Shown: positions 1,309 through 26,544 of the stretch, in pieces
How the letters are laid out: each line of letters opens with the position of its first letter
How positions within the stretch are numbered: position 1 is the stretch's first letter
Origin: Diadema antillarum
Taxonomy: Eukaryota
Length of the DNA stretch: 64,000 bases
Assembly: GCF_040938485.1 (NCBI RefSeq)
Contig: NW_027271384.1
Location: 310,001-374,000 of the forward strand
Reading direction: 5' to 3'
Made by a program: the position numbers and the translations under genes
The notes under the pieces: model-generated
What the model was told of the DNA's origin: nothing
Databases searched by the model: none
What the model saw: the letters and a program-made list of their open reading frames with translations, nothing else

Positions 1309-3881
1309 ATGATGGCTCTTGCTTCTGCACCTGATGGGAACTTGTCAGTTGTTCTTCACGCAAAGGACAAGATAGTGTTGGTGAGTATATTGTATCATAG
1401 GCCTGTAGGTCCTATTGACTTCAGTATTGTCACGGCTTGTCAGCCGTGTATTATGCTCAGACCCTCCAATCCAGGCTCGCTTATTACGGCCATGCACAGG
1501 GTACGTGAAGATCTAATTTAGTGTCTACGTGCACGTTACAGTATTCACCGGCAGTATAGCAATTGCTCGTGCCAGCCTTTTATTGCTTAGCTTGAATCTG
1601 TTGCTTTGATCAAAGCTTTTGCAAGCAAGTACTGCCCGCGATCATTTGCTAAGAGACCAACGTATTTCCTTATATAAAAACGTATGTATATTTACATTTA
1701 ATCTATTGTTTATTTATTCATGTATTCATTTACATTCATTTACATTCATTCACAACGAAAAATACAAATAAGCAAACAAACGGGGGCATGGTTATTATAC
1801 CCTTCAGTTCTGCTGATATCCAGCAAACCTGCTTTTCAAGGAAGCGTACGTAGTATACATAAACTTTCAGTTTAAAACAAACAATACAAACAAACATAAA
1901 AAACAAAGTATATATATTGGCCCTACATAGATACAGTCATATTTACAAATCATTCTTTACAACTACATTCGCAAAGGGTATTAAAATGGATACCAGTGTA
2001 TAAGTACACAGATCAACTCACAGAGTCAGATTAACATTATTTCCTATGTGCTTGGCAAAGTATAAGATCATAAGGTATGAGGTTGGTCGGCAGTGTTTCT
2101 TGAAAAAGGGGCAGTAAACTAAGCGTATGGATGGAAAGGGGTTGAGCATGGGAAGAGCATATTGGACAGGCTTATAGGAAGAACTATACCTTTTCCGTAC
2201 TCGGTGGACTATTGGTAACATGTATCCGTGTTACGTAATAAACGGGTCGCTGTGTGATCAGGCGATTCAGGTATTTGTTACATGTGTAGAGGCGGTGCAA
2301 ACCTGTTGAAGATGAGACAATGAGACAATGCTGTTATTTTATCCTGTCTTCAGTATCTTGCCAATTTAGTGTTGGAATAAAATGTGATACAGATTCTTGT
2401 TGCTTTATATCGAAAATCATTATATGAATATATCTATTTTGCATCGTTTGTAATTTCTTAATTCTTTTTTTTTTTGTGATTTGGAACATTAACCCCAGCT
2501 TGTGAAACAGTAATCTATGTGGGGTAAAACTAATGAGTAATACAAATTGATAATGGTTTTACGTAAAAAGATTTCACTCTTCGAATGCTTTTCACGGGCT
2601 GTTTTGGCACATAATATATAACATATACGTGTTTAGACCAGTTCAAAGTAGGTTCCTAATAACTCAGCTGTTCAATATACTGGTCATTGTACATATCACA
2701 CAAAATTTTCAATGTTACAATTTCTTTCTCGGACCAAACACCATTTACATTTATAACATTTTGTTTATTTTCATCCACTGACAAATCTGATCACACTGTA
2801 ATTGCTTTTCCTCTCGTAATAATTACATATTCTTTTTTCTACAAAATATTCCTGTGTCATCTGCATAAAGAGACAATTTAACATTCAATGATATATGTAT
2901 AATTATGTTACACAGGGTCATTAATATATATTATATATACAAAGCAATAATGGACCCAGTGTTGAATCGTGGGGTACACCAGATTTCACGGTATAGTCAC
3001 TGAGAATACAATTTGTACAAACACATTGTTGTCTACCACTTAAATAGTTTCTGAACCACTGTGGTTCTTGAGAGAATACCCCATATATCTTGTAAGTTCA
3101 TGAATAATAAAATCATGCAGGTCCTGGGCCCTGTTTCATAAACCTGTTCGTAAAGTTACGAACAATTTACGAGCGACTGGTGATCAGTTCTGATGTGCTA
3201 TAATTATCAGAATTTCCATAATTCAGCTCAAGAACTGATCACCAGTCGCTCGTAAGTCGTTCGTAACTTTACGAACAGCTTTATGAAACAGGGCCCAGGA
3301 GGAAGTCCGTCATTAAGATTAGAGAGAGGAAGAAAGTGAGATTGCGTAATAAAAGTGAGTAAAACCTGCATACATGCATAAATAATCAGTCATGGCTGTT
3401 GAGATGCAACAACATCAATATATCAGAGAGTTAAAAAAATGAGAGGGGTGGGTGCCTGGCGATTAAAAAAGATCTTAACAAAAGATAAAGTAAAAAAGGG
3501 GGATATTAAAGGCTAAAGCAAAAGACTTGATTTCAACATATACCAATTAGGGTCTACTTAACACATTTTATCTTCACTTGATATCACAACATTAAAAATA
3601 GTTTTAAGAAGTGAAGAAATTAATGAAAGGACCCTCGCAAAAAACAAAAACAATAAACATTCATTTATCTTACAACAACCATTTCAACACGAAAAAAAAA
3701 ATCGGAATAAAAAAATATATACAGGCCTATAGTAATGTTGATGATGGCTTCCTGTCCAAAAGCCTGTGAAAAGGGGTCTCAATCTTCAGGACTGGAGTGA
3801 ATTAGAAATGAATTGATCACTTTTTATGTTGAACAAAGAAGACTTAATTTTCCGTATCCTGTATGATTGTTAATACCTATA

Positions 3882-3925
<44 letters not shown>

Positions 3926-6900
3926 TCCCCCCCCCCCCCTATGAAAACACGTTTATCAATGGAGAATTATTTATCGGACTGGTGTGAGACCTAAAAACGT
4001 GCCTTCGCCATAATTGCCTTGCTGATAGTCTTTAACAAGACGCGCCTTGTGGAATACAAACTTAAAGCCATATGGTAGGCTTAAATAGATTGCCCTATTG
4101 TCTGTGCTTGAAATATACATCGTGATCGTGATTACAGTCTGACGCGAATACATGAGTGACCATTACCGTAAGTCCATCAAGCCACGCTCTGCATGAGCTA
4201 TAGCAATGGTATCATGGTAACGCCACTTAAACTTGTTTTGATGAAATGTCGAATGTAAGCGATCATAATTATCTAGCTCGTGCTTCACAATATCTGATAA
4301 GACTGAAAAAGGAGAACCCTTATCATGCCTGATTACAAGAACAATGGCGGGCCTCTAATACTTGTATTGCAATCTGAAATATATTTAAAAAGATTGATTT
4401 GCATGTATACAACTAGAATGATGCGAAGCGTTTATGGAATCTCTCGGCATTTCAGATTTTACTCTTTTTTTTATTGAGAAGAAAACTGTACTTTCGTTGT
4501 CTAATAAAATTCATTTATTGCCATACTTAGTCATGAAGTTGTTCGAAAATATTTCACGGTGTGGTGTCTATTGTGTGTCAACATCCAGCAGTATGATTCG
4601 GCACGCCAAATTGAATGCCATGTCTATGCACAGGACTTCAATAAAAAAAATAGAAATAATGACGCCCGTCGAAAGATACAATGTGCGCGCAAGTTATTTG
4701 TGTCGTGATACAAAGTAGACAGTGCCTTCATAATTGGACGAGCGAGAATATAACGAAGGGCACGGGTGAATAACATGTACAACAATATGTAGTGTATGTA
4801 CTTGTATAGATCTTGAAGTTTGTACTTCGAACTCGATATGTAAATTCAAAGTGAAAAAAAAAATGTTTTACAAGTGCATGTAAAGTTCATTAAATTTCCT
4901 ACTCGTGCAATATGTGGTTGGCATACTTGTATACAATATCGTGAATGTGAGGGATTTACTATTTTACTTAAATGTGTATGTGATTGTTCATCCTTCATTT
5001 TGTTTAAAATTCTTTCTTGTATTATGCAGGAAGATTCGCCAATCCCTGAGCCAAAGGAGAATGGTAAGGCAGTAAATGCATATCATATAGGGAAAGTTAC
5101 TTTACCCGAGTGTCAGAGATATTTTGACATTTTTGGAATGACAAAAAATGGACCAGAATATGATAATAATAATAATAATAATAATAATAATCTTAATAAT
5201 AANNNNNNNNNNNNNNNNNNNNNNNNNNNNNNNNNNNNNNNNNNNNNNNNNNNNNNNNNNNNNNNNNNNNNNNNNNNNNNNNNNNNNNNNNNNNNNNNNN
5301 NNNNNNNNNNNNNNNNNNNNNNNNNNNNNNNNNNNNNNNNNNNNNNNNNNNNNNNNNNNNNNNNNNNNNNNGTTGTACCAACGACATTAACTCATTCTGT
5401 ATAATGGGAAGCGAAGGGACTCACAATGAAGGAGATAATAATGATTGTTGAAATGTCTCTAAAAGTTGATTTTCATGATGGGACCAACTGAAAGTGCTGG
5501 GCGACACTTGTCCCTTGCTTACCGATGGGGTACAATAAAAAAGATAATAAATTTGTTGTCGACAATTTGCTCATCACAACACAAGATTCGAAGCCACAGT
5601 ATTTAATCAACATCAATACACACACACATACACACATGCTCACATCACACACACACACACACACCCAAGCAAACAACCACAAACAACCACTCAAAAACTT
5701 ACAAACAGAACAAAAAGAAGGAAAATAATAAACACCCTCGCTATGTCTTGATACTTCTATTTACTCCTACAATAATACATAATTGCTGCAAAGTACAGGT
5801 ATACAAAAACATTTCAAAAGCCGTATTATGCCCAGTATTATGTAAAAATGCGTTTTTGCGCGTAATATTATTATACTAAGTACATGAATGCATTGCTGTA
5901 TAAGAAAACTGATACCACAAAGCCTTATAACACCAACGAAGAAAAATTAACATCNNNNNNNNNNNNNNNNNNNNNNNNNNNNNNNNNNNNNNNNNNNNNN
6001 NNNNNNNNNNNNNNNNNNNNNNNNNNNNNNNNNNNNNNNNNNNNNNNNNNNNNNNNNNNNNNNNNNNNNNNNNNNNNNNNNNNNNNNNNNNNNNNNNNNN
6101 NNNNNNNNNNNNNNNNNNNNTTCTCTTAGGGGGAGGGGTCGTGGTGATAAAGGTGTTCCCGGAATGTTTTTTTTTTAAATAATTTACTTATTATCTTTCT
6201 GTGGTTGTGACGCCGTTGACTAGCAATTATTTTCGAGGAATACTGAAGGAGGATCTCGATGCCTTATGCGATTCCCACAACAAAGTGTTCCTAGCTCGGG
6301 CTGATCAGTTGACGCTGATTTTTTTCGGACTTCAATACATTCCTTGATGTGATCTCAAAGTTGACAATGGTATAGGTCTTGAACCTTGAACCTTGAAGTA
6401 GTAATCCCTTTCAGCAGTTCCTTGAAACTATCCCGGGATGAGTCTCTCTATAAAGGCCACATATAAAGTTTCCCTTGAGTGGCCTTTCTATATACAGACA
6501 TTCTATTTCGGTAAAAGCGATGAGTTTCCGTAGAGACCATTATTTTATCTACATGTGTTAGACCACATTTATGTGTGGTTGTGTGGATGTCTTTTTTTTC
6601 AGAGGTCCAGCTCAAAATGGCAGCAGTGGGAATCTGTGGGTCAGATATTCATATGTGGTCCGATGGCTCCATAGGCGACCTTGGAATCACATCGCCAAAA
6701 ACTCTAGGTCACGAAGCTAGCGGCACTGTGACAGCAGTGGGATCAAATGTTACGTCATTGAAAGTTGGTGAGTCATCACCATCAGTAATTTGAACCTCCT
6801 GTTGGCCAGATTTCACTCCAAACACACACAGACAAACACACACATACATTTTACAGCGAAGTTTCTTTCTTATTCATTTCATATAATGAAAAAAATCTCA

Positions 6901-9900
6901 TATTTCAGCTGCATAAATATAAAACTTGTCTTATAACCACCCAGAATAAAAAAAAAAATGCCAACGCTGATATATATCTTATTATTATGGGAACATGCTT
7001 ATACTTGTATTAGCTAAAATGACATTTTTGTGAATTTCGTACATAAAATTCGTGAAAAATTATGAGGGCATGACATCATCAACTCGCTGATTTCAAAATG
7101 TCGTATCTTCCTTATTTCTTATCCGAGTTTGATCATTTTTGTATCATTTTGTAGGGAATATTTCTCTCTTTCGTTTGACGTTTATCTAATATTGGGGTGG
7201 ATTTCTGATTAAAGAAAAAAAAACTAAATCAATGTGCATTTAACAATCAAGAAAATATTCAATTATGATTTCTTCCATTATGTTTTGTAATGTGAATAGG
7301 TGACAGGGTGGCTTTGGAACCCGGTATACCGTGTTTGAGGTGCGACATCTGTAAAGGTGGTCGCTACAATGTTTGTCCGAGTATGCTCTATACTGGTGTG
7401 ACTGTTGACGGTGGACTAAGAAGATACGCTTGCCATCCTGCCGAATTTTGCTTTAAGTAATAAATAATTGCGATTCTCTTTCTCATTCAGCCCCAATTAA
7501 GTAAATACTTGCAGCCGTAACAAACAGCAATTGCAGCTATATTAAAGACATTGATATTGTTATCATTTGATATGAAATGTCATTATATAAACTTACCAAA
7601 ATTATCTTAACTCATACTTTTATTTTAGAAATGTAATTATGATATACACTTGTATCTGTTTGTGCTCGTGTAACTCTAGTTGGGCAGTGAAGTCAGATGA
7701 ACTGTCGTCATAATTAGCTATTATGGATTGATTCAAATCTTATTTATAAATGTCACTTTAATCGCTCATGCCAAGCAGTTCTCTGTTAAACTTCATTTGT
7801 ACATGACTTTGAAAAAAGCTAAGATTTACATATTGTCTTTGTGCTACTATCATGAACTATATATCAGTAAACCTAGTCAACTGGACTTCATACTTAATTA
7901 TGTTTTTGGAGTAGCGACGCTTCACGTCATCTCCGGGACTCTTTATCAAGCCGACTGATCTTTGGCGGCAATTGGTTGTTGACCCGTGACAGGGTCGGGG
8001 AATTTTACGTCTGCCTGATGAAACGTCCCGGAGAGGACGTGAAACGTCACTACTTCAACGATACAAGTAAGTCCAGTTGACTAAATTTACTGATATGTTC
8101 ATGATCTACTTTACCTGGATGACTGAGAACATTCACAGACAATAGTTGGATGTTTGCAAAACAGGTAAACAATTAGTGTTACACAAGTAACTTTATACCT
8201 AGGAAAATTTTGTATTTATATATATGAATTGTTATTCTCTGTTTACTGTCCCGTTTTCCTCCTAGTTCCGTTTTGATTCAAGTTCAACCGTTTGTATATT
8301 TGCTGTCATTCTTTTTTTTTTTAAATGAAAGTCGATTTGAGATGGAGGGAGGTGGAGTGGAGTTTTAAAGTGAAGTTCACACCACTTTGCAGACTGCCTG
8401 ACCACGTGAGTCTGGAAGAGGGCGCACTTCTCGAACCATTGTGCGTTGCTATCCATGCTTGCCGAAGGGCCAGCGTCTATGCAGGGTCCAAGGTACTGAT
8501 CTGTGGCGCAGGTAATTGTGATGTTCTCTTACACATTGATTCTTAATTAACGCAGTATATCTAGTGGCAAGAGCAGTTGAAGTAAAGGCGTTTTAGAAAA
8601 ACGAACTGATGTGCTGTGGTGTAAAAGTATAATACGCGCTGTACAGACCTCGGAAAAAAAAATAAGGCAAATACACTACAATATTCATATTCTTGAAAAT
8701 TCTTGATGTTTTGGTGAAATCTAAAATAATCGTATATATCATTTTGATCGTTCGTGTTCTCCATTTGGCTTGGCAAAACTTTGGAAGTATTTTCGTCGCC
8801 AGTTGGTCTCGAGGATTGAATAACAATATATTTGCGAAGGCATGCAAGAGCCTTGAACGCATTTTTTTTTTCAACTTAATCTGATTAAACTGAGGAAATG
8901 ATTTGTCCGACCGAATGGATTTAATTACCGAGTGTGAAACTGAAACGCACGAAAAGTGGCAGCCAACCGTTGCTTCAGATTGTTTTGTTCTTTGTTATGT
9001 GCCATTCATTGGTGATTTATAGGGCCGATCGGACTACTGTGTCTTTTGACTGTAAGAGTCATGGGGGCAGCATCTGTTGTTATCACAGGTCAGTAAAACT
9101 TTTTCTTTTTCCTTTTTCTTTATTTTTATGTTTTGGGTCATCCGTATGTTCGTCTGTACTGCCTAGATCTCATTAAAATGACTGACAAAAAAAAAATACT
9201 AAAATTCTTTTTTTCAGTGCTTAGCAATGATATCATTTTAGGCGAAGTATTTTGTGGTCAGGATCTAATTAATGCCCGTCAACTTTGATTCAGAATGTTA
9301 TATTCCCTCCATAACTTAAGCTGGAATAAGCTGGGCTGAAATTGAGATAGAGTATACAGTCTTATTATTTATCTGCATAAAACTCACCTTCATAGTTCGC
9401 TATGTGACTGGTTTATGGGATAATAATATTACATGTATCATAAGAATGTTCACCATCCTCTGGTATTGAATCAATGTTCTCTACAGATCTCGTACAGAGT
9501 CGTCTGGATATGGCCGTTCAGCTGGGCGCTGACCATGCGGTTCTTGTGGACACCAAGGATGTCCAAGAGATGGTCAAGCGTATCCACACTGCCCTTGGGG
9601 ATAAACCCAACATCACCTTGGAGTGTACTGGGGCGCCCGCTGCTCTACAGACAGCAATTCATGTGAGTATGTCAGTTATCTGCATATATGCGTCATATTT
9701 GCATATGAAAATTCGAATTCACTCATATACAAATGTAATTTAACTTGCTAAAATTCCACATTAAGTAATGATGAATGGCAGAAATGTTAGAATTCAAACT
9801 TGGACGATATTTAACAATGAAGAAGTTAGGATATTTAGAATATATTGACCAAAAAAAAAATCCATCAAAGGTTGTATTAGGGTCAAATCCTATGTCATCA

Positions 9901-11801
9901 TATCACGCAAGGACCAATGTAGAATATCGAATTCATCCGAAGAGAAACAAGGTAAGGTGGTAGAGTAACAGGAGATATATTTAGGACTTACAGCCTAATC
10001 CCTATTTGGAGTTTAAAGGTTAACGGAAGCAGAGCCTCTCTTCAAAGTGAGAAAACGAGATAGTAATTGAGTCCTCGATGTAAAATGAGTGGATGTAAAT
10101 CAACACTTTCCTTATAAGAGGAACTAAGATATCCACTGACGATTATACAGATTCCAACCGGTTCTCGTAGACGATTACTTCAGATTAATAGGAGAGATAA
10201 TGGTCTGATGACCGCATTCTTGTTGACTTCCTGATTTCAAAGTACAATATAGTACATGTATAGCACAAATGACGGACCGAAAATAAAGGAAGGTTCGTTA
10301 ATCCGAAAAGGGAAAAGAAAGTGCGTACTAACAAACCTTCGGAATAACAAAGATTTTTATGTTTTCGGATTAACCAATCTCCGGAATAACGACATTTTTT
10401 CATTATCGGATGCATGAATCATGGAATAACGAACCTTATTTCATAACGAATCTTCGGAATAGCCAACCTTACTTCATCTTTGGATTGACGATCCTTCGTT
10501 GATAACTCTTAGTGATGAGAGACGAAACGTTAGATATTACTCACTGTACTTAAGCTATTTTCTTCTTTTTTTCGTGTCACATTTCAGCTTTTAATGTCCA
10601 GTGGTGATTCAATTTTGGATCTATATTTATAGGAAGGATGAGACATTTATTTCGCTGAAGTCACAAGTTGGAAAGGTCACTGGTTCAAAAGCCACTATAG
10701 CCTTAGCTCAAAACTGCAGTTTTTTAGCCATTATGGATAGTCAAAAAAAAAAGGAACTCGGATCGTCCCTCCTACCCCCCCCCCCCCCCTCTGCAAAGAA
10801 AGTTAGTCCTCGGTGTCAATAAATAGGATCATTGAATTGCCTCTAAATGTAAATGAATGGCCACTATTATTTGGACTACGGTTATTTCATCAACAACAAA
10901 AAAGTGAGGGCATTCCAGCTGAATGAGCGCAGTAGCCAAATACTTGAGCTCGTATTAACATGAAAGCTAACGCACTTCGATTGATCCGGTAGAAATGGAT
11001 ACTAGTATATCGTTGATCGATTCTACATGGTTCTGTTAACAGGCTACCCAGATAGGAGGTGTTGTGACTTTGGTTGGACTGGGCCCATATAACATTGATC
11101 TTCCAATCATCCTGGCAGCATTCAAAGAATTGGACGTTCGCGGCGCCATCATGCAACTGAACTGGTGAGTGAATTCTCCTCTGTCCGTCCAAACCAGTGT
11201 ATGCTGTAACCCCCACCTCCTTTGTTTTGATTTATACTATGATATGATTTCAATTACCTCTTACCAAAACGGCATACAANNNNNNNNNNNNNNNNNNNNN
11301 NNNNNNNNNNNNNNNNNNNNNNNNNNNNNNNNNNNNNNNNNNNNNNNNNNNNNNNNNNNNNNNNNNNNNNNNNNNNNNNNNNNNNNNNNNNNNNNNNNNN
11401 NNNNNNNNNNNNNNNNNNNNNNNNNNNNNNNNNNNNNNNNNNNATTGTTGATATAAATTATCTTATCAGGACCTTTCTGTATTATAAATACATTGTAATC
11501 TATGTCTATCTACATATTCAAGTTATTTAGTGTTCGAAATGATGTATTAGCTTTGTATATTCTGCTTTAATCGCAATCTTTATATTCGAATGACTACCAT
11601 ACATCAACCGTAAATTTTGATTGTTGTTTAAAATCTGCTTGTAGTTTCCCGACTGCTCTGGACATGATAGCGAGCGGTAAAGTGAATGCCAAGCCGATCA
11701 TCACCCACCATTTCAAGCTGAGCGAGGCGATGAAAGCCTTTGAGACTGCCAAGGCTGGGGCAGACGGCGCCATCAAGGTCATGATCCACTGTGACCAATA
11801 G
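1309..11801 (+). CDS. SORD: Sorbitol dehydrogenase-like Zn-dependent medium-chain dehydrogenase, paralogue 1 (9 exons, 355 aa)
   Basis: Exons 1309-1380, 5030-5063, 6603-6767, 7300-7456, 8393-8511, 9023-9088, 9487-9662, 11043-11164, 11645-11801. All introns GT-AG, phases consistent, 1068 nt open. Motifs [57 protein letters not shown]. Exon sizes match the vertebrate SORD structure as I recall it. Substrate may not be sorbitol (see findings). Confidence 0.93.
2020..3120 (-). mobile_element. Decayed CR1/L2-group LINE (RT relic) in SORD1 intron 1
   Basis: Broken frames give [27 protein letters not shown] and LYADDT (about 2853-2870). Confidence 0.7.
3127..3295. mobile_element. Small palindromic Harbinger-like MITE
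   Basis: About 60-bp imperfect inverted arms starting GGCCCTGTTTCATAAA, with CTG/CAG flanks. Sits at the end of a LINE relic. Confidence 0.7.
7850..8142. mobile_element. Penelope-like element relic (inverted pseudo-LTR ends) with hammerhead-like motif
   Basis: Two inverted copies of CTGATGA..stem..GAAACGTC..AAGTCCAGTTGACT, ending in ACCTGGATGACTGAGAACATTCACAGACA, which I recall as the typical Penelope/Poseidon terminus. Confidence 0.7.
8015..8048 (+). ncRNA. Minimal type I hammerhead ribozyme core (probably degenerate)
   Basis: CTGATGA-A-[ACGTCC cggaga GGACGT]-GAAA-CGTC. Helix I pairing is poor. Confidence 0.45.
10270..10505. repeat. Degenerate TTCGGAATAACGAACC-type subrepeat element; related copy at about 14290-14535
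   Basis: Multiple AACC/TTCGGAATAAC motifs in both orientations at both loci. Confidence 0.45.
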
Positions 11802-14679: not shown

Positions 14680-14755
14680 AAATGCAGTAAATCCGAGTTA
14701 AATTACAATAGTGAATTCCACCAAATGCAGTAAATCCGAGTTAAATTACAATAGT
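14680..14755. repeat. 33-bp perfect direct repeat with 10-bp spacer
   Basis: AAATGCAGTAAATCCGAGTTAAATTACAATAGT at 14680-14712 and 14723-14755. Confidence 0.9.
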
Positions 14756-15107
14756 TGCATCTGATTATGAATTATTGAATTGTTTACTTTCAAGTAGATA
14801 TGTAAAATGCGATGCATATTATGCTACCATTTGTAAACATGAATGAAAATATAAAGGACATACCTGTATCGCTTGTGAAACGTGATACTCTTGCGCAGTG
14901 TGTTGCGTCCATGTCTACACCAACTACTGAGTGGTATGCTAATCAAACACCTTTGTGACAGACAGAATACTAGTGTAGAACTGCAGTGTTATGTGTTAGA
15001 TCTTACGCCGATAAAAATGTCGTAGTTTCATGTTGAATAATGAGGAAGATGACTTCGTCGTTCAAAAAACATGTTCAAGTTCACGTTGTAAATGTTATAC
15101 AAAACCA

Positions 15108-15138
<31 letters not shown>

Positions 15139-17068
15139 GAAAGCAGGACTGATAGAAAGTAAGGGTATCATATTGCTGCTTGCATTCAAAATAATCAAAA
15201 TAAAGTCTCGTCCTTATAGTAATGTTTTATATAGCACACAAATACAAAATCCTTGTTTAAATGCTATAAATTGATCAAATTAAAGAGCTGTCTTAATTGT
15301 ATGTACACCCAAAGAAGCCACAAGTTCAAGTTGATTTATTTCACTTCCAACAAACAAATAATTACAAATACAATGAAACGCTCGTATACACAGACGTCAG
15401 GAAATCAGTACCACAATACGATGAACAAAATAACTTTGTAAAAGAGATACAGGTAAATTATCAACAGAGATACAAATAACTGTTACGTCACTGTGGTAAA
15501 TGCATAAACAATATTGCTGGAAATGGGGGGGGGGGGACTGCTAAAAAGCAGAGCTTGTAGAATGCAGTCCCCTCATAGAGAAAAAATATAATTGCAAAAA
15601 AAAAAAACCCCAACAAATTTCCCTAAGCGGTAGTAAAAAAAAAAAGAAAGACAGAGTAATACACACATACATGCACACATACGGACGCACATTAACAAAC
15701 ACAAGGCGGCTCTCTTGTAAGGAAAGATTGATGAGAGGATAGAAAGATATAGTAGTGAAGAAGGTAGTAAGTCCGAGGTGGACAAGGGGGGGGGGAGAAG
15801 AGGGATATGGTGGGTCATAACCAGGGTACTGGAGGCACAGAAGCACGGGCTCGCTGATGAACAAAGAGTAGTGACATTAACGAAGCAACGACAATTTTGA
15901 AAATCAAAAGTGAAAAAAGAATGAATTATTATGCTGTATAAGAAGTTTTTAAATGATTCTTTAACTTTAAAGAAAATGTACTAAAAATTAAAGCTTCTTT
16001 TAGATTATTATCAAGAGAATTCCAGTGCAATTCCTCTATTTAAGTTGACTTCAATACAGAAATTCAGACAAACAAAGTAGCAGAAGTTTCATAAAGATTT
16101 GACATATATAAGAGAGATATGGACTTTTGAAGTGTCCCGTTTTTTCATCTGATGGTGATATGATTGAAACAACGACACGCTTTCATCAGATGCAGGCGAT
16201 AATGGCATATCTTTTTGTTTTCTTGATGTGTAAACCCACTTTGGGTTGAACTGGTAAATATTTAGTCAGGCATGATTTCATTTTGAGAGAATAACGCAGA
16301 ACATTTACGTAAATTCTGACATGGAATCAGTACCTTCTTCATTTATGCATGTTCAGTAAAGGTAGAATGACGTTATTGTTTTTAACATAGTACTATAGTA
16401 TGCAAAAGAAAGTCACAATAGAACATACTCTTATCATTAGAAAAAATCAGACTTAGTGGATGCAGTGAATTTACAACTGAATGAAACTCAGATTACGATC
16501 ACCTTGCTAATACGCCACCTNNNNNNNNNNNNNNNNNNNNNNNNNNNNNNNNNNNNNNNNNNNNNNNNNNNNNNNNNNNNNNNNNNNNNNNNNNNNNNNN
16601 NNNNNNNNNNNNNNNNNNNNNNNNNNNNNNNNNNNNNNNNNNNNNNNNNNNNNNNNNNNNNNNNNNNNNNNNNNNNNNNNNNNNNNNNNNNNNGGCTTCC
16701 ATCTACTCATGATGCATCTGCCTTTAATTATGATGTCAGTGATGTTACCGGTGGAAATCCAGGGTCCACTGTCCACGCATTGTAGCATGTTCGTAGTCTC
16801 CGTTCATTGCCTCATGGGACAAATTCCACCTCTGCATTTACCTGCAGAAAGCTGAATATCGGTGCCCTTCGCTAGCCCATCATTTCATTGCCAAGCCAGG
16901 TATTTTATCCGGTTGTGTCATCTACGTTAACAGTTCCAACTCCTTTAGCAGGTCAAACTCCTTGGGGAAAATTTGGCGTCCAAAGAAGAAGCCCTTCATT
17001 GTCGTAATACCGCAGAGCGTTTGTCACATCTTTCCATCCGACGCCATTTTGAAGCCTAACCCGGGAAC

Positions 17069-17374: not shown

Positions 17375-17412
<38 letters not shown>

Positions 17413-17967: not shown

Positions 17968-18025
<58 letters not shown>

Positions 18026-21000
18026 TCTTGATTTCATAACAATGCTGCCCTGGTCTGCTTGTCCATTCAGACAGTTGCACGGCAGTAAAGAGCAAGTTAA
18101 TCTGCATTACAGATATGTTTCTAATAGCTACTGATAAGGTATCTTCTTAGAATTTTGTCTTTGGTTTCTCTCAACGAAAAGAGCATTATGACACAGACCC
18201 AGATATTGGCGTTTTACGACAATATTATAACTGTAGCTTTTTCAATAAAACTTTTGAAACAAACGTATTGCAGAAGGAAACATATAACACACGGGTGCAG
18301 TATTACTGTTTAAGAGAGAGAAAAAGAGAGAGATCCATGTTAACTCTGAGTGCTCCATTAAGGTGATAGTGATATGATCAAATGTCATTTGTAACCGTGA
18401 AGTCATTGTCTTTCGCTATAATCAGAATTTGAATTTCATCATACTTGACAGATGCATCAAAATAGAAAAGGGCATTTTAGGATTTTTCTGTTGCTTAAAA
18501 GACTGTATGTTTTCCAGCATCGATCTGTTGCGTGGAGTTTTGATTATGAACGACCGACATTTTTAGAAGAAATCGCCAATTGTTCCTGGGTTAGAAAGAG
18601 GTCTTTATAGGCCTACTATATTTATGTGATGTATATAATTCATTATTGATTTGATACACAGTCCAATTTCTACTCAGTTAGATTCCAGTCAGTTGCACTT
18701 TATTTCCATGAAAAAAAGAATACAGATAGTACGAGGTATAAATTTGGCAAATTATCTATTGTTTAAGACTCTTATAAGTAGTGCAAGTCAAACTTTTTAA
18801 AGTATAATACAGGATGTACGAATGAACGCGTAATCAAAGAAACGCTGGGTGCATACTTTGCAAGGACCACACAAGTGAGCATCGATGAAAAAGAGTGATA
18901 AACTGAAAAACAAGAGTTTGCAAGACGCAGATCACTCGATAAACAGTATGCAAATAATGCATTTAATATTTAAAAGATATGTGTAACGATAGATCATTAT
19001 AGCAGAATATGCACGTAATATAAAAAAAAAATACTATACTTGTAGCCAGTACTTGACGTACAGTATAGAGGAATGACAGTTAATGAAGGAGGTGTTTAGA
19101 TAGTAATCCACTGTCCACTGATTTAAGTGTTTAATACACAATAATGTACTCACAAAATACATCAGTGACTAAAGGAAAGGCTACGCAAGTGATTAGAATT
19201 ACACTCATGATGTAGAACTACCCGGGAGTGTGACCTATATGAACAAGCAAGAATCATTGAACTTCGTACTTCAGACAATAAGGTAAAAATAACATAATGA
19301 TTTCTGTATGATGTATTGTTTGTGTTAAAGGACAAGTTCACCTTCATAAACATGTGGATTGAATGAATGCAGCAATATCAATAGAACACATAATTGAATG
19401 TTTGGGGGAAATCGGACAATCCGTTCCAAAGCTATATGAATTTTTAAAGCATCTGCGCAGTCACTCCTGGATGAAAAGACTACTACAGTGTATGATGTCA
19501 TATGCGTAGAAAGATATTAAGAAAATATAAAGAGAATTTCACTTTTTTTAAAGTGCAAATTTCCTCGACTTGTCACTGACGTATATTAAGGGTAATATTA
19601 TTCCCCTTGCCCTCTCAAAGAGACAAGACAATTGTTCTTTTGTTATGCGAGAAGAGGGAAATTATGTTGAATTTTCTTTATAATATTTTCTTTATATCTT
19701 TGTACACATGTGACACCATAACCTGTAGTCGTCTTCTCGTCCAGCAGTGACTGAGCAGAAATTTTGAAAATTCACAACTTTTCAATGGATTGTCTGATTT
19801 TCCTCAAACTTTCATTGATGTGTTCTAATAATATTACTGCATTCACTCAATTAGTGTAGCATTATTGCACGTACGGAACAGCTACCTTGATACAGAAAAA
19901 TGCAATATGTATGTGAACGATGCAATCCTGTGCATAGAGCAGAATACGTGAAGAATTATTTTGGCTGCATGATTCGTTTTGAGTTCCGAAATTTGATTTT
20001 TCGTCTATTTGGCAGGAAGATGTGCCCATCTGTGAGCCACAGGAGAATGGTAAGGCACCAATGATTTTTTTTTCCAAATTTACCTAAGTGTCACATAAAA
20101 CCTTTTAAAACATACTGGACTATAACTGTTGCGCATGCGTAATAAACTAAATCACTTCCCTTCAAAATTCAAGAACCAATGTTTTTGTTTGAAATGTGTG
20201 TCGAAATGAGATTTTTGTATTTTCACAGGGTAGGGACACCCATCTTCTTAAACCTTGGTTTAATATTGGTTTCTGACTGACTGTCCGATATTCTATTTGC
20301 TTATGACTTACGCTTTAGATTGCGTTCATTCTTTACTCACTCAAATTATAATGACCTAGCTGGTCTTATTTGCTAATGAACGGTACCGTATTAATGTGAA
20401 GGGGCCAGGGCGAGTCCATTGTAATTAAAGGTTTGAGACTTCCATGTGGTGTAAAAACTATATATTTGCTTTATCTCAGAGGTCCAACTCAAGATGGGAG
20501 CAGTCGGGATCTGTGGGACAGATATTCATTTTTGGTCAGAGGGCAGCGTTGGCGACGTCACAATCAAATCACCAACGATCCTGGGCCACGAGTCTAGCGG
20601 CACTGTGACGGCAGTCGGGTCAAAGGTGACATCCTTAAAAGTGGGTAAGTGCCATGATGCCATGAATAATTTTGACACAAGTCACAGCATGGAGAGGGGA
20701 TGGGGAAGGGGACCGTGATCAAAATGATATAGGAATACTAGGACTTACATGACTTTTTATGCCTAATATCTTTAAGCAGTTTATGTCGTTTACTGATTTC
20801 TATATACGCTTCTGCTACCTGGGTCAGAGTGGTATATTTTGAGGCAATCCTAGTGCGCTATGCCCATTAATGTCTTGACAGTGTATAGAAAACGTCAAGT
20901 TGAAGTTTTAAAGTTTTATCATGCATGTCATACAGAAAAAAAAAAACGTAATTTGTTTTAAGAATAGCCAACCCTGATGAAAACGCACACATCGGTCGGC

Positions 21001-24000
21001 TTAGAACTCTCTTATTCAAGTTATCTTGAAAGGAAAATCGGATTTCTTTTCTCCGATAGTAACACAGACATTCATAGATATTTTACCATGAATTCCCTCA
21101 TTTTTTCCATGACATAAACAGGTGACAGGGTTGCCGTCGAACCTGGTATACCGTGCCTAAGGTGCGACATCTGTAAGCGTGGTCGCTACAATGTTTGTCC
21201 ACATTGGCTCTTATCCGGGATGACTGCTGATGGTGGGTTGACGAGATACATGTGCCATCCAGCCGACTTCTGCTTCAAGTACGAGTTCATTCCGATTTCT
21301 CTATTTCAAATAAGTTTCCTCCAATACTTAAAGGTTGATTTAAAACAAATATGTATGTGTGGATTTAGTGAATGCAGAAATATTAGTAGAGCACATCAAT
21401 GAGGTTAGAAGAAAATCTGACGATCTGTTAAGTTATGAAAAAAAGGTTGTTGCCGGCACGCTTTGGTGGATAAGAAAGCTACAGCAGTTTGTGTTGTTGT
21501 TGTAGCCTTTGAACGATATGGAAGAAATATAAAGAGAATTCAACATATATACATTGTATATATTCTTATATTTAGGTTATACAGCATTATAAAAGAGCAG
21601 TTCGTCATACTCCCTTCAGAACTAAGGCAGGGCAACTCAGGAAGAATATACCCTTAACATAAAGCATTACCGGTACAATGCCCTTAGTTTTTGAAGATAT
21701 CATTGTTTTAAAATGATACGCTGCCACAACACTAGTGTTGTGCAACTCAATAGTGTGTGATTACGAACTTGATCATAATACTCTATGAGGAGTTCTAAAC
21801 AATAGAAAAGTGTTTTGAAGAAAAATAGATTATCACCACCAAATCAAAATTAATTGGATATCACATAGCAGTGACCATTATACATATCACATTAAGAATC
21901 ACAACTATAACGTACCGCAACTTTTTCTTAGTAATATTCCGTATGATGCAGTACCATGGGGTGGGAGGGAGGATTATTGCCTATAATAGGTTATGGTCCA
22001 AGCTGCGGATCGAGTTCAGGGAAGCATCACTCTTTTTTGGCAAGTTCTGCAAGCCCTCCTGGGAACTACCGCAGGTAGCAGTCATCCATGATGTGACACA
22101 GAGTTTTGTCATGATGGCCGCAGTCTGTAGTATTACGCCGGGCTGTTTAAAAAAGCCCCATTCGTGTAGACGGCGGTCTGTGCCGTTGTATGGAGGATGC
22201 GGATGCGGTTCAGGGTGGGCCACTGTTTCCGAAGGAGGTTGAATCCCTGTCTGTGGTTTTAATTGCTCTCGGGTAAGTGTTGGTGTTGAACTTAACATGA
22301 CAGGTACAATGTATCGCAGACAGCATCAGATCAGCGTCTGCCCCATTAAGTTTCACATGGAGTCAAAGTTTTCCAATGACGGAAGGACATTCAGATTGGA
22401 TTGCAGGATTTACGGCGCTTTGATGGCAGGTTGTTGAGGTTATCGTGGATTTGAAGGTCATGGTCTGCATTAATTGATGGCACTGGTCATCCCAGTTACC
22501 ATCCTTTCTCTTCCGCGTAGGGAGGGGAAGTGATGTGTGCCAAGTACGGGCAACCAGTGAAGAGAGGTGGACTTGAGAGTGCCTGAGACTACTCGACATC
22601 GCATTGCCGAGTTCAGGACTGTATATCAACTCGTTTCGTGTGGCAGATGTTAGCACCTACTCTGTAGTCGAGTAGGTGTTGTAGTATGAAGAGCACGTGC
22701 TGGCTTTTGAACCCCAGTTGTTGCTCGCTATTTTCCTAGTGACCATGGACCGGTAACTGGGTGGAATGAACCAAGGTGACGAAGGAGGTTCCATGTCGAT
22801 CATTCTTCTGGAGTGACTGAAATCCAGTATACGTCCACCATTTCCTGCCACCTTTGGCGTCTTGCTGTTAAGTGATGCCAGGAATTCAGTGTCAATGCCG
22901 CAACTCCTGCACTTGAATATCTTTTTTTTTTTTGAATAATTTATTATGCAATAAGCTCGACACTCTTCATGTAACTAGTTGTTCCGTTTATCCTATTTGA
23001 CAGTTTTACTGTAGGCCCTAATACAAGATACCCTTTTGCAAGTAATGGTATAACTGAAAAGATCAACATTTCTGTCTAAATGTTAGAGTAAGTACTACCG
23101 TATGAATACCGTACTCTATCCCCTATTCTATCCAGAGTAGCTAAGCATAGAGTCTCCATACCGTCAAGCCTCGGCTTATTTTGGAGACCCTTCTGTTTAA
23201 GTTCCCTATAAGCTGTTTGTATTTGTCTTGTATAATTGTACTAAAAACTATGTGTCGATATACTGTTTGTCATAAATGACGTGTATATAATCATATCTAA
23301 TGTAACGGAATTAAGCAGAAATAAATCAAATCAAATCAAATCAAATCAAATCAAATCAAATCAAATCAAATATCATTATACGTGAACATCTAAGGTGTAC
23401 GCCTAATGTATACACTGTTTGCAGACTGCCTGACAACGTGAGTCTGGAAGAAGGTGCACTTCTCGAACCATTGGCTGTCGCTCTCCATGCTTGCCGAAGG
23501 GCCAATGTCTTTGCAGGGTCCAAGGTACTCGTCTGTGGCGCAGGTATTCTAAATGCTCCTGTTAAACTGATGCCTTTTAAAAAAATTTTCTCAACGGTTA
23601 ACGTATACTAGTAATAGAGGCAAAAGTATAAGTAATTGTTTTTGCAGCCAAGAGCTTGTAGTGTTACGATGAAATTAGATTATACACAATTTATACATTG
23701 ACAGTTGTATATTGACAAAGGCAAGTTCTTTAAAGGAAAACACACAAAGTTCCAAGATGAGTTGCACTGGCATAGGAAAGTGTTGGTCCACAACATAGTA
23801 CTTTGAACGCGTGTTCTCGCGTTTTTCAGCAATGAAAATGAATCAGTAGAACAATATTACTGGAATAGTATTACTATCAGTGATAATATGCTGGCGATGA
23901 TGATCAGACATGACTGGTAGAAACTCATCCCTAATTTTGGATTTAACATGTGACGATGCATGTCTTTATCGATATAATGACACAGGTCGTGCAGGAGCAA

Positions 24001-26544
24001 TTACATGTTTTTGCCAAAAAAAGAAAAGAAAAGAAGAAGGCAGCGTTATTACAATTTGATTGCGTTTATTGGTATCTTATACTGGAGAGCATGAATCAAC
24101 TATATCCATTTTATGGATTTTCTTTCTTTTATTGCTATTTCTTCGTTTTGTAGGGCCGATTGGGCTCTTGTGTCTCTCGATTGCTAGGGTTATGGGGGCG
24201 GCGTCTATTGTGATCACAGGTTTGTATACCAATAAGGTTCTTTCTCCCTTTTGTTTATCTATATCATATTGATTTTATCATAAATTTTGCTTACACAATA
24301 ATATGATAAATTGTGCGAAAAACATAGATATATGAAGAAAGATATATGTTATTGAGTTTTTGTCGGAATGAAAAATACAAGCAAATTCTGGTTTGTATTT
24401 TTATCAAGTCATTCCGTGTCATTAACATTTTTTTTTTTAAATACAATTCATTTTTATAAGACTGGTGGCCGGTGATCACTGCATCATTATTTTAGATGCC
24501 ACATTTCATCACCAAGTATACATGGACTACTGATATTTGCATCAGAAACAGCAGATATTCCTTGAATTTTCCTTCTATATAATGTTACGTTTACTGTTTT
24601 TTAAGGTGGCTTAAAAACCTCGTTTGACTGACTTTGATTTTCGTAGTGATCGACAGATTCAGGATGACAACTTTACAAAACGTATATTTACGTTCAACTA
24701 ATATTGAGGCACGGATTACATGCCCTATACATATACAACAGTGCTATTTCTCTTTTGGAAGCTCGTGGTATTGCATACTCTATGAGGGCTTGCATCCTTA
24801 CAGTTCAAATACATTTAATAATCTACAGATCTAGAACAGTATCGCTTGGACTTAGCCGTTCAACTGGGCGCTGATCATGCCATTCTTGTGGACACCAAGG
24901 ATGTCCAAGAGATGGTCAAGCGTATCCACACTGCCCTTGGTGATAAGCCCAACATCACCTTGGAGTGTACTGGGGCGCCCGCCGCTGTTCAGACAGCAAT
25001 TCATGTAAGTACAGATGGATCCAATTTCAGAGCACTGTAACTTATGGCGGCCATAACTGGGGGCTTCCAAAGAAGATCAAAAACACTTTCAGTAGGTTGT
25101 GCAATGAGCCAGCTGCGACGCTATGTCAGTAAATGAATTATTTATTGTTAGGCATACTTGAACCCCCACCCCCGTTACAAATTACCATAAGTAACAGTGC
25201 CCAAACAGAATTTGTTTATTTATAATAGACCATATAGGAAAAGCAGTAAGTCTCTCCTTTTTAAAAATATCTATATTCTGTCTAAACCCTGCAACCAACG
25301 AAAACGATTCTGTTTTCACGTTTTTTGTTGTTGATGTTGCAATTTTTTATTACAACTTGTCGAGATACTGTCAAGAATGACGCATTCTTTTCACCGAGGT
25401 TGAGGAACAAGATAGTGAAATTAACTTAGAGGTCGAGGGTCAAGCTATGGCCTGTAGGTCAAATTTCAAGCTGAATGTTAGGTAACTTCAAAAACTGTTT
25501 GACTAATGTACGTAAGAGGATGTAATCTGAAACAATTTCCCAATTACATTCGAAGCTTGCTAAATTGATGCTGACCTCTCTTTTTTGCCGCAGTGAATAT
25601 ACCAGTAAACCATCGTGTTTTATTCATTGGTGGAACCATATTCTCAATATAATTTTCACTCTTAAGTGAAATCTAGTGCAATGTGAAAAGAAAACAGCAA
25701 AGCAAAAAGAGATTCTGTCTGTGTGGTTCTCTACAGGCTTCTCAGATAGGAGGAGTTCTGGCCGTGGTTGGATTAGGAGCGTACCACATGAACCTTCCCA
25801 TTTTTCCGGCGTTGATGAAAGAGCTGGACATTCGCGGAACTAACGCTTATGCAAACTGGTATGGGAAAAGTTTTTCGCCTCCAGTGTTGTGGATTAGTTT
25901 AACGTAAGAGTGACAATTACCTCTCTTCCACCAATCCGCACACTGCTACACGTAACCTTGCAAAGTTATCAAATATTATTATTATTAGACGTATTTTCAA
26001 AAAAATCTTATTCTGTGTTCTGACTTCAATGGCAGTGCCTGTTCTTCTTTTTAAAAGCACGGACATTTCGCAACGGATTTGATTAAAATTATGATAATTA
26101 TTTCTCGCAGTAGATCAGTGGATTTCACGAGATGTGTTCTTGTTTTTTCATCTTTAATAACCATCATCATACCGGCTCTTGTTAACCGTTATTAGGAAGT
26201 GTTCCCCTCTGTAATGTTTAGTCGCTTGTGACTAACTGCCGTGATATTAATGTCATCATACAGGCATCATACAACAAGAAGCGCCCTTTTGATGTATATA
26301 TACTTTCCATATAATGTCAACAGAACGTTAATTGTGCAAATAAACAATCATAATATCATGGAACTTGTTATTTTTGTGTGTTTGTAGTTTTCCGACTGCT
26401 CTGGACATGCTGGCCAGCGGTAAAGTGAATGCCAAGCCGATCATCACCCACCATTTCAAGCTGAGCGAGGCGATGAAAGCCTTCGAGACTGCCAAGCAAG
26501 GAGGAAGTGGCATAATTAAAGTCATGATCCACTGTGATCAGTAG
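17069..26544 (+). CDS. SORD: Sorbitol dehydrogenase-like MDR, paralogue 2 (9 exons, 354 aa)
   Basis: Exons 17069-17137 ([23 protein letters not shown]), 20016-20049, 20480-20644, 21122-21278, 23425-23543, 24154-24219, 24829-25004, 25737-25858, 26388-26544. GT-AG introns, 1065 nt open, same exon sizes as paralogue 1 apart from exon 1. Confidence 0.93.
17346..17663 (-). mobile_element. tRNA-derived SINE in SORD2 intron 1
   Basis: On the - strand: A box TGGCTCAGTGAGTAG, B box GGTTCAAACC, body CATACCAAAAGACGTTAAAAGATGG (resembles the MetaSINE-type central domain, from memory) and an (ATT)n tail at 17346-17412. Confidence 0.8.
17968..18024. repeat. (TCTA)n microsatellite
   Basis: Read directly. 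Other microsatellites: (TA)n about 3885-3921, (AAT)n about 5162-5202, (GT)n about 15108-15132 and 54728-54756, (ATCAA)n about 23324-23370, (GTT)9 47976-48002, (AAAC)n about 58340-58382. Confidence 0.95.
19329..19851. mobile_element. TTAA-flanked Kolobok-like element, right end truncated
   Basis: TTAA|AGGACAAGTTCACC left end. The inner TIR segment ATTGAATGAATGCAGCAATATCAATAGAACACA is mirrored at about 19819-19851. Confidence 0.6.
21975..22915 (-). mobile_element. Decayed I-group (Ingi/Vingi-like) LINE relic in SORD2 intron 4
   Basis: Broken frames give [30 protein letters not shown] and [24 protein letters not shown] (C-terminal Cys/His knuckle), with several stops and frameshifts. Confidence 0.65.

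What the first reader, a model, noticed from the sequence alone, without database searches (positions are those of the whole stretch)
1309..26544. Tandem SORD-like pair whose substrate pockets have each been rebuilt: candidate novel polyol/sugar dehydrogenases
Seen: both intact genes keep the catalytic Zn ligands (C in GICG, H-E in GHE, E in LEPL), the Rossmann motif GAGPIG and the NAD-selecting Asp (TDL). Recalled knowledge: human/sheep SDH binds polyols via Tyr50, Phe59, Phe118/Thr121 (FFCATPP) and Phe297-Arg298-Tyr299 (GVFRY). Here Tyr50 is Met (copy 1) or Phe (copy 2) and Phe59 is Leu or Val. FFCATPPDDG becomes LYTGVTVDG or LLSGMTADG (one residue shorter), and GVFRY becomes GAIMQ or GTNAY, so Arg298 is lost in both. 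The copies differ from each other at exactly these positions. Inference: neither is a canonical sorbitol dehydrogenase; they may act on different substrates, for example dietary algal polyols or sugar acids.
Basis: partly seen in the sequence, partly recalled or inferred. Interest (0 to 1): 0.72.

Follow-up and report, generated by a model that had tools for sequence, protein, structure and literature searches.

The report
Diadema sorbitol-dehydrogenase copies with rebuilt pockets
Next to its ordinary sorbitol dehydrogenase gene, the sea urchin Diadema carries two intact extra copies that keep the catalytic machinery but have replaced almost every residue that holds the sugar alcohol, so they most likely work on other, still unknown substrates.

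Summary
The window (Diadema antillarum JBFRCO010000496.1:310001-374000) holds two intact 9-exon genes on the + strand, c1 (355 aa) and c2 (354 aa), 80% identical. They match RefSeq XP_071498844.1 and XP_071498845.1 exactly. All five N gaps lie in introns or between the genes.

The pair is the downstream part of a tandem triplet. A canonical SORD lies 14.3 kb upstream, outside the window. The same three genes stand in the same order in D. setosum.

A tree puts c1+c2 as sister to the Diadema canonical gene, inside sea urchins, on a 16-fold longer stem. Both copies keep the zinc ligands, Glu155, the Rossmann motif and Asp203.

Of 18 conserved active-site positions, 11 are changed (Fisher p=1.7e-4). 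The changes include Tyr50, Phe59, the 118-123 loop (one codon shorter) and Phe297-Arg298-Tyr299. These positions are canonical in 51 other animal SORDs.

Between the two Diadema species dN/dS is 0.16 (c1) and 0.10 (c2), against 0.03 for the canonical gene. The copies are maintained, not decaying.

Best reading: neofunctionalised NAD-dependent zinc dehydrogenases with new substrates. Substrates and expression are untested. This is a new variant of a known kind, of moderate interest.

The parts
1309..11801 (+). Gene c1 (SORD-like copy 1), 9 coding exons, 355 aa; equals RefSeq XP_071498844.1
1309..1380 (+). c1 exon 1 (start codon)
5030..5063 (+). c1 exon 2 (34-nt microexon, found by conservation with c2)
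6603..6767 (+). c1 exon 3: Cys44, His69, Glu70; pocket positions 46, 50, 56, 59
7300..7456 (+). c1 exon 4: four-Cys structural zinc motif; rebuilt loop 118-123, one codon shorter (157 nt against 160)
8393..8511 (+). c1 exon 5: Glu155-Pro156, first half of GAGPIG
9023..9088 (+). c1 exon 6: second half of the Rossmann motif
9487..9662 (+). c1 exon 7: Asp203 (NAD-selecting), coenzyme domain
11043..11164 (+). c1 exon 8: Leu274 and positions 297-299 (I-M-Q)
11645..11801 (+). c1 exon 9 with stop codon
17069..26544 (+). Gene c2 (SORD-like copy 2), 9 coding exons, 354 aa; equals RefSeq XP_071498845.1
17069..17137 (+). c2 exon 1
20016..20049 (+). c2 exon 2 (microexon)
20480..20644 (+). c2 exon 3: zinc ligands; Ser46Thr, Tyr50Phe, Ile56Val, Phe59Val
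21122..21278 (+). c2 exon 4: four-Cys motif; rebuilt loop (L-S-G-M-gap-T)
23425..23543 (+). c2 exon 5
24154..24219 (+). c2 exon 6
24829..25004 (+). c2 exon 7 (Asp203)
25737..25858 (+). c2 exon 8: positions 297-299 (N-A-Y)
26388..26544 (+). c2 exon 9 with stop codon
5203..6120 (.). Two assembly gaps (5203-5371, 5955-6120) inside c1 intron 2; no exon affected
11280..11443 (.). Assembly gap inside c1 intron 8
12332..16693 (.). Intergenic stretch between c1 and c2 holding two assembly gaps (12332-12519, 16521-16693)

Best explanation
c1 and c2 are the two downstream members of a tandem triplet: canonical SORD, then c1, then c2. The triplet arose by genomic duplication of the ordinary sorbitol dehydrogenase gene. 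The duplication happened in the Diadema lineage, after it split from camarodont sea urchins and well before D. antillarum and D. setosum diverged.

After the duplication the common ancestor of c1 and c2 changed quickly. The changes are concentrated in the substrate pocket. The two copies then diverged from each other, again preferentially in the pocket. Both have since been held under purifying selection.

Both copies keep everything needed for hydride transfer: the catalytic zinc ligands Cys44/His69/Glu70, Glu155, the structural four-Cys zinc site, the GxGxxG motif and the NAD-selecting Asp203. They have replaced the residues that position the distal hydroxyls of sorbitol: Tyr50, Phe59, Phe118, Ala120, Thr121, a deleted Pro122, Phe297, Arg298 and, in c1, Tyr299.

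Inferred mechanism: they are active cytosolic NAD(H)-dependent zinc alcohol/ketone oxidoreductases. They still oxidise a secondary alcohol held at the zinc. Their distal pocket is differently shaped, uncharged and more aliphatic, so their preferred substrates differ from sorbitol or xylitol and from each other.

Shown here: gene structure, synteny, phylogeny, selection and the pattern of substitutions. Inferred: catalytic activity and the change of substrate.
For: - Gene models equal the RefSeq proteins.
- The triplet has the same order and strand in D. antillarum (285915-296960, 311309-321801, 327069-336544 of JBFRCO010000496.1) and in D. setosum OZ188192.1.
- Intron positions are identical. 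Exon 4 is 160 nt in canonical genes of four urchin species and 157 nt in c1 and c2.
- The ML tree gives (S. purpuratus,(Diadema canonical,(c1,c2))) with support 99/94. The stem is 0.48 against 0.03 substitutions per site.
- Tajima relative-rate test: 74 against 12 and 81 against 11 unique changes, p about 1e-11.
- dN/dS between D. antillarum and D. setosum: 0.162 (c1), 0.099 (c2), 0.032 (canonical).
- Of 18 conserved active-site positions (list from PMC4404067), 11 are changed, against 23 of 134 other conserved columns. Fisher p=1.7e-4.
- All seven zinc and cofactor positions in the list are unchanged.
- Arg298 is present in 318 of 329 full-length family members collected. Three other sequences are cut short before this region. 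The only full-length ones that lack it are the Diadema copies and two distant relatives (36-47% identical to c1) of unidentified origin.
- Camarodont SORDs are all canonical.
- The AlphaFold model of c2 has pLDDT 93 and TM 0.92 to sheep and human SDH.
- Single changes at positions 59 and 297 are known to shift polyol specificity in LAD/XDH (PMC2731777). Changes at 50, 120 and 121 mark plant L-idonate dehydrogenase (PMC4404067).
Against: - There are no enzymatic data.
- There is no expression evidence: no RNA run was listed.
- Gene-wide dN/dS never approaches 1 on any branch. Rough least-squares estimates give 0.17 for the stem and up to 0.53 for the c1 stem. Positive selection is therefore not demonstrated, and relaxed constraint followed by renewed constraint would give a similar picture.
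- The c1 pocket still varies between species and haplotypes by conservative aliphatic swaps. This could mean weak constraint rather than tuning.
- The active-site list comes from a homology model in a plant paper, not from a structure of this protein.
Confidence: 0.7

Rival explanations
1. Subfunctionalised sorbitol/xylitol dehydrogenases. c1 and c2 still oxidise the usual polyols, perhaps with altered Km or kcat, and are kept because they are expressed in different tissues or stages.
For: The catalytic core and the cofactor site are fully conserved. The fold is the SDH fold. SORD enzymes are naturally promiscuous towards polyols (PMC4404067).
Against: Eleven of the 12 non-catalytic active-site positions are changed in one copy or the other. 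They include 59 and 297, where single changes alter sorbitol affinity about 5-fold, and Arg298, which all but two of the full-length relatives collected outside Diadema keep. One loop residue is deleted. A regulatory split alone would not predict a pocket-focused burst.
Confidence: 0.17
2. Relaxed or decaying duplicates, or proteins recruited to a non-catalytic role, for example a structural or binding protein derived from an enzyme. On this reading the pocket changes are drift.
For: dN/dS is 3-5 times higher than for the canonical gene. The c1 pocket is polymorphic between haplotypes and species. No expression evidence was obtained.
Against: The reading frames and GT-AG introns are intact in two species and two haplotypes. 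dN/dS is 0.10-0.16, far below 1. Every zinc, Glu155 and NAD position is retained, which drift or a structural role would not require. The c2 pocket is identical between the two species.
Confidence: 0.1
3. Assembly artefact. The two 'copies' are haplotypes or a collapsed or expanded duplication.
For: The assembly has a separate 194-kb haplotig carrying the same genes.
Against: c1 and c2 are only 80% identical, with dS of 0.67. The haplotig carries its own c1, c2 and canonical alleles at 98.6-100% identity. The chromosome-level D. setosum assembly has the same three genes in the same order.
Confidence: 0.01

Closest known systems
Canonical animal sorbitol dehydrogenase (SORD, EC 1.1.1.14; human 1PL6, sheep 3QE3; Diadema XP_071498843.1)
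   Same: Same fold (TM 0.92). Identity is 47-48% to the mammalian enzymes and 67-69% to the Diadema canonical paralogue. Same 9-exon structure, zinc ligands, Glu155, NAD-selecting Asp203 and cytosolic N-terminus.
   Different: Tyr50, Phe59, Phe118, Ala120, Thr121, Pro122 (deleted), Pro123, Phe297 and Arg298 are replaced, plus Tyr299 in c1 and Ser46 in c2. The evolutionary rate since duplication is about 6-fold higher.
Plant SDH class II / Vitis L-idonate 5-dehydrogenase (PMC4404067)
   Same: It also arose by tandem duplication next to a canonical SDH. It also evolved faster, and its substitutions also fall at pocket positions 50, 120 and 121 (Ala120Gly is the same change). It acquired a new substrate.
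   Different: Its origin is independent (plants). It changed only three active-site residues and kept Phe297-Arg298-Tyr299 and the full-length loop. The Diadema copies changed about ten and lost the arginine. The plant substrate (L-idonate) is known; the Diadema substrates are not.
Fungal L-arabinitol 4-dehydrogenase and xylitol dehydrogenase (3M6I, 7Y9P; PMC2731777)
   Same: They belong to the same polyol-dehydrogenase branch of the zinc MDR superfamily. Their specificity differences map to positions 59 and 297, which are also changed here.
   Different: Identity is 37%. They keep Arg298 and the Pro-Pro loop, and they act on pentitols. There is no evidence that c1 or c2 share their substrates.
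Whitefly NADP(H)-dependent ketose reductase (1E3J)
   Same: It is the best PDB match for two of the four exons searched. It is an invertebrate SORD relative with the structural four-Cys zinc site.
   Different: It has a canonical pocket loop, and its change is in the cofactor site (NADP). In c1 and c2 the cofactor site is canonical and the pocket is changed.

Membership tests
Zinc-dependent medium-chain dehydrogenase/reductase, polyol dehydrogenase (SORD) branch | ADH_N (PF08240) plus ADH_zinc_N (PF00107) domains above Pfam cut-offs | tested here: met
   101.7/83.6 bits for c1 and 103.7/91.1 bits for c2
Zinc-dependent medium-chain dehydrogenase/reductase, polyol dehydrogenase (SORD) branch | Catalytic zinc ligands Cys44, His69 and Glu70, plus Glu155 | tested here: met
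Zinc-dependent medium-chain dehydrogenase/reductase, polyol dehydrogenase (SORD) branch | Rossmann GxGxxG motif and Asp203, which selects NAD over NADP | tested here: met
   the role of Asp203 is taken from PMC4404067
Zinc-dependent medium-chain dehydrogenase/reductase, polyol dehydrogenase (SORD) branch | SDH fold and phylogenetic position inside the animal SORD clade | tested here: met
   TM 0.92 to 3QE3 and 1PL6; nested inside the echinoid SORDs, support 99/94
Canonical sorbitol dehydrogenase (EC 1.1.1.14), judged by pocket signature | Tyr50, Phe59, the F118-C-A-T121-P-P loop and F297-R298-Y299, each conserved at 90-100% in 51 animal SORDs | tested here: not met
   11 of 18 conserved active-site positions are changed and one loop residue is deleted
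Canonical sorbitol dehydrogenase (EC 1.1.1.14), judged by pocket signature | Oxidation of sorbitol to fructose with NAD+ | not testable with these tools
   needs an enzyme assay
Plant SDH class II / L-idonate dehydrogenase type | Tyr50His, Ala120Gly and Thr121Ser with F-R-Y retained; membership of the core-eudicot class II clade | tested here: not met
   Only Ala120Gly is shared. The Diadema copies branch inside the echinoid SORDs. This is a parallel, not a membership.

The most novel reading that the evidence does not exclude
c1 and c2 are the first animal SORD-derived enzymes that have left polyol metabolism. On this reading they act on non-polyol substrates: less hydroxylated, uncharged alcohols or ketones, for instance diet-derived algal metabolites or Diadema-specific compounds. 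The c1 pocket would still be diversifying within and between species: M50I/L, I56V, L59V, V121L and V159I make up 5 of the 16 differences between species and 2 of the 5 between haplotypes. That would indicate ongoing adaptive tuning rather than drift.
Probability: 0.25. Interest if true: 0.65.

Novelty: new variant of a known kind. Interest (0 to 1): 0.42.

Why it matters
SORD is usually a single, very conservative housekeeping enzyme in animals. Here the ancestral copy and two derived copies sit side by side in two sequenced species, so this is a clean natural case of pocket remodelling after tandem duplication.

It is directly testable. Expressing the three proteins and screening substrates would show which of about ten substitutions, plus a one-residue loop deletion, redirect specificity in the polyol-dehydrogenase scaffold. 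That is useful for enzyme engineering.

It also gives an animal counterpart to the plant change from SDH to L-idonate dehydrogenase. And it flags two RefSeq 'sorbitol dehydrogenase-like' names that probably should not be read as sorbitol dehydrogenases. D. antillarum is a keystone Caribbean grazer, so a lineage-specific metabolic enzyme may bear on its diet chemistry.

Tried and rejected
1. Full-length homology search from the window. A spliced protein cannot be given by reference, so I tried scaffold alignments of exon pieces.
   - MAFFT misplaced several pieces (A1-A4, A6, A7).
   - The first profile search (A5 on a moth SORD scaffold) returned only insect SORDs and was wasted.
   - The second (A8 on a shorter scaffold) found the Diadema proteins.
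2. The exon-4 search of 1.84 billion cluster representatives found no protein with a c1/c2-like loop. Clustering at 50% identity hides the Diadema copies under canonical representatives, so this alone was not decisive.
3. Expression. The look-up of sequencing runs listed no RNA run.
4. Ancestral reconstruction for a stem-branch dN/dS. I used least-squares branch fitting of pairwise dN and dS instead. It is rough, because dS is saturated for six pairs.
5. Distance-to-zinc enrichment. Model coordinates are not exposed, so I used a published active-site list instead.
6. Literature searches for Arg298/Phe118 and for Diadema SORD found nothing relevant.
7. Looked for a third copy or a pseudogene inside the window. 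None was found.
8. Checked whether the window overlaps the locus of the canonical gene. It does not; the canonical gene ends 14.3 kb before c1.
Full report
**What is in the window.** GC content is 39% and there are seven N runs. Motif scans and conservation between the two copies located two sets of nine coding exons on the + strand. Each set includes a 34-nt microexon that was only visible as the single conserved island in the long second intron region. Splicing with GT-AG sites gives c1 (355 aa) and c2 (354 aa), which are 80% identical without gaps. tblastn found no further copy or fragment in the 64 kb.

**Gaps.** The five gaps in the finding's range fall in c1 intron 2 (two gaps), c1 intron 8 (one) and the intergenic stretch (two). 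No exon abuts a gap. Loci fetched from the same assembly were used only for coordinates and for other genes.

**Identity of the genome and validation of the models.**
- A profile made of exon pieces on a short scaffold (A8) pulled out two Diadema antillarum RefSeq proteins of exactly 355 and 354 aa.
- c2 is 100% identical to P0274 (XP_071498845.1) and c1 is 100% identical to P0466 (XP_071498844.1).
- The coordinates of P0274 place the window at JBFRCO010000496.1:310001-374000.
- A 194-kb haplotig carries allelic versions of the same genes.

**The pair is part of a triplet.**
- Cluster look-ups show a third, canonical gene. It is P0469 (XP_071498843.1) in D. antillarum and P0288 in D. setosum.
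- In D. antillarum it lies at 285915-296960, on the same strand, and ends 14.3 kb before the c1 start codon.
- In D. setosum chromosome OZ188192.1 the order is canonical (32250063-32259856), c1 (32270289-32282130), c2 (32287432-32297157), all on the + strand.
- Exon sizes are 66 or 72, 34, 165, 160, 119, 66, 176, 122 and 157 nt in the canonical genes of both Diadema species, S. purpuratus and L. variegatus. In c1 and c2 the only internal difference is exon 4, at 157 nt. That is the one-codon loop deletion.
- This is therefore a DNA-level tandem duplication, not retroposition.

**When it happened and how fast.**
- An ML tree of 25 sequences puts c1+c2 as sister to the Diadema canonical gene, inside the echinoid clade. 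Support is 99/94, and 100/99 for the echinoids as a whole.
- The stem leading to c1+c2 is 0.48 substitutions per site, against 0.03 for the canonical sister branch.
- Tajima tests with three outgroups give 64-81 unique changes in c1 or c2, against 11-13 in the canonical gene. The p values run from 6e-9 to 3e-13.
- Pairwise dS is 0.12-0.20 between orthologues of the two species, 0.67 between c1 and c2, and 1.2-1.7 between either copy and the canonical gene.
- Both duplications therefore long predate the species split but postdate the split from camarodonts.
- S. purpuratus, L. variegatus and L. pictus have only canonical-signature SORDs.
- A full-length search with c1 against 5.8 billion clusters found nothing closer than 68% outside Diadema.

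**Selection.**
- dN/dS between D. antillarum and D. setosum is 0.032 for the canonical gene, 0.162 for c1 and 0.099 for c2.
- All six genes, and both haplotypes, are intact. The D. setosum c2 RefSeq model misses exon 1, but an intact exon 1 with a GT donor lies upstream and restores a 354-aa frame.
- The copies are maintained, under constraint 3-5 times weaker than on the canonical gene.
- Rough least-squares branch estimates give omega of about 0.17 on the common stem, 0.53 on the c1 stem and 0.14 on the c2 stem. There is no gene-wide signal of omega above 1.

**Where the changes are.**
- In an alignment of 51 canonical animal SORDs plus the Diadema copies (A9), 152 columns are at least 90% conserved. 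Of these, 34 are changed in c1 and/or c2.
- I used the 19 putative active-site residues published for SDH/LIDH modelled on human 1PL8 (PMC4404067). Renumbered to human they are 44, 46, 47, 50, 56, 57, 59, 69, 70, 118, 120, 121, 155, 156, 159, 274, 297, 298 and 299.
- Eleven of the 18 that are conserved are changed, against 23 of 134 other conserved columns. The odds ratio is 7.6 and Fisher p is 1.7e-4.
- The seven unchanged conserved positions are exactly the zinc and cofactor core: C44, D47, G57, H69, E70, E155 and P156. L274, which is only 65% conserved, is also kept.
- The pocket signature over 44, 46, 47, 50, 56, 57, 59, 69, 70, 118-123, 155, 156, 159, 274 and 297-299 is as follows:

| Gene | Signature |
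|---|---|
| Canonical (Diadema) | CSDYIGFHE-FCATPP-EPV-M-FRY |
| c1 | CSDMIGLHE-YTGV(gap)T-EPV-L-IMQ |
| c2 | CTDFVGVHE-LSGM(gap)T-EPV-L-NAY |

- Changes shared by c1 and c2 are V48I, A120G, the loss of P122, P123T, and the loss of F59, F297 and R298. Remodelling therefore began on the common stem.
- The copies then diverged at positions 46, 50, 118, 119, 121 and 297-299.
- Differences between c1 and c2 are enriched 3.9-fold at active-site positions, p=0.006.
- Among the 329 full-length family members collected, 318 have Arg298. Of the 11 without it, six are the Diadema copies, three are cut short before this region and two are distant relatives, 36-47% identical to c1, of unidentified origin.

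**Structure.** An AlphaFold2 model of c2 has mean pLDDT 93 and pTM 0.91. The lower-confidence blocks are 51-60, 101-120, 271-280 and 291-300, which are the remodelled elements. Foldseek gives TM 0.92 to sheep and human SDH and 0.94 to whitefly ketose reductase.

**Functional inference.**
- The chemistry at the zinc should be retained. This covers Ser/Thr46, His69, Glu70, Glu155, and NAD binding with Asp203. Both proteins should therefore be NAD(H)-dependent secondary-alcohol/ketone oxidoreductases.
- The distal pocket loses Tyr50, Thr121 and Arg298, and loses Tyr299 in c1. It gains aliphatic residues, with a few polar groups at new places: Tyr118, Thr119 and Gln299 in c1; Ser119 and Asn297 in c2. 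It is also one residue shorter.
- Precedents show that much smaller changes at these same positions alter specificity. LadA Y318F, which is position 297, lowers the Km for sorbitol about 5-fold (PMC2731777). Y50H, A120G and T121S accompany the change from sorbitol to L-idonate in Vitis (PMC4404067).
- I therefore commit to altered substrate specificity, different between c1 and c2, with 0.7 confidence.
- The loss of the only basic pocket residue, without a conserved replacement, makes sugar acids unlikely. Other polyols or less hydroxylated alcohols and ketones remain open. This step is inference.

**Ongoing change in c1.** Five of the 16 c1 differences between the two species (M50L, I56V, L59V, V121L, V159I) fall on the 19 active-site positions. 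So do two of the five differences between the two D. antillarum haplotypes (M50I, V121L). None of the 13 c2 differences do. All these changes are conservative aliphatic swaps. They could reflect fine-tuning or tolerance.

**Mosaic divergence.** Per-exon dS between c1 and c2 is 0.2-0.46 in exons 2, 5, 7 and 9, and 0.87-2.0 in exons 1, 3, 4, 6 and 8. The pattern is the same in both species. This suggests old gene conversion in the coenzyme-domain exons that spared the pocket-bearing exons 3, 4 and 8. The exons are short and I ran no formal test.

**Comparison and novelty.**
- These are true members of the zinc MDR polyol-dehydrogenase branch: domains, ligands, fold and phylogeny all fit.
- They fail the pocket signature that defines canonical SORD.
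- The nearest known parallel is plant SDH class II / L-idonate dehydrogenase. It is an independent case of tandem duplication next to a canonical SDH followed by pocket substitution, but with three changes rather than about ten.
- RefSeq names both Diadema genes 'sorbitol dehydrogenase-like'. I found no paper on them.
- I rate this a new variant of a known kind, of moderate interest.
- Another note of this scan on the same genome describes an ALDH5 paralogue with a rebuilt pocket. I did not test it.

**Limits.** There are no enzyme data. No RNA run was listed. The active-site list is model-derived. The sample of family members is biased towards the best hits of four searches.

Noticed in passing
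outside the window: JBFRCO010000496.1:285915-296960 (L002:10001-21046): A canonical SORD gene (XP_071498843.1) lies 14.3 kb upstream of c1 on the same strand. The locus is therefore a triplet. D. setosum has the same order.
   Followed up: yes
window exons 8393-8511, 9487-9662, 11645-11801 against 23425-23543, 24829-25004, 26388-26544: Synonymous divergence between c1 and c2 is mosaic: dS is 0.2-0.46 in exons 2, 5, 7 and 9, and 0.87-2.0 in exons 1, 3, 4, 6 and 8. The pattern is the same in D. setosum. It suggests old gene conversion that spared the pocket exons.
   Followed up: partly
window 6603-6767 and 7300-7456 (c1 codons for positions 50 and 121): The c1 pocket is polymorphic. The haplotig allele (XP_071482458.1) has M50I and V121L. 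D. setosum c1 has M50L, I56V, L59V, V121L and V159I. The c2 pocket is invariant.
   Followed up: partly
L005:2069-2137 (D. setosum OZ188192.1): The RefSeq model XP_072167432.1 (333 aa) of D. setosum c2 starts in exon 2. An intact homologue of exon 1 with a GT donor lies about 0.9 kb upstream of the annotated start and gives a full 354-aa frame.
   Followed up: yes
window 34851-39881 (-): A 1676-aa open frame matches Pao retrotransposon peptidase, reverse transcriptase and integrase domains. It is a BEL/Pao LTR retrotransposon, apparently intact, about 8 kb downstream of c2.
   Followed up: partly
window 13069-13606 against 50165-50725 (inverted); 27253-27618 and 27890-28247: Dispersed repeat copies at 66-92% protein identity when translated. 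One lies between c1 and c2 and one far downstream. A further 368-nt repeat family also occurs next to the haplotig's SORD locus. These are probably transposon fragments.
   Followed up: no
P0039 (469 aa; organism not identified): A SORD-like protein in the public collection has lost the catalytic Cys44 and the His-Glu pair ('IGNSD', 'LGYQG') and carries a long low-complexity C-terminal tail. It looks like a pseudo-enzyme and is unrelated to this locus.
   Followed up: no
window 7300-7456, 21122-21278: Echinoderm and other invertebrate SORDs, including c1 and c2, keep the four-Cys structural zinc motif (C-x2-C-x2-C-x7-C). From memory, not checked here, mammalian SORD has lost it.
   Followed up: partly
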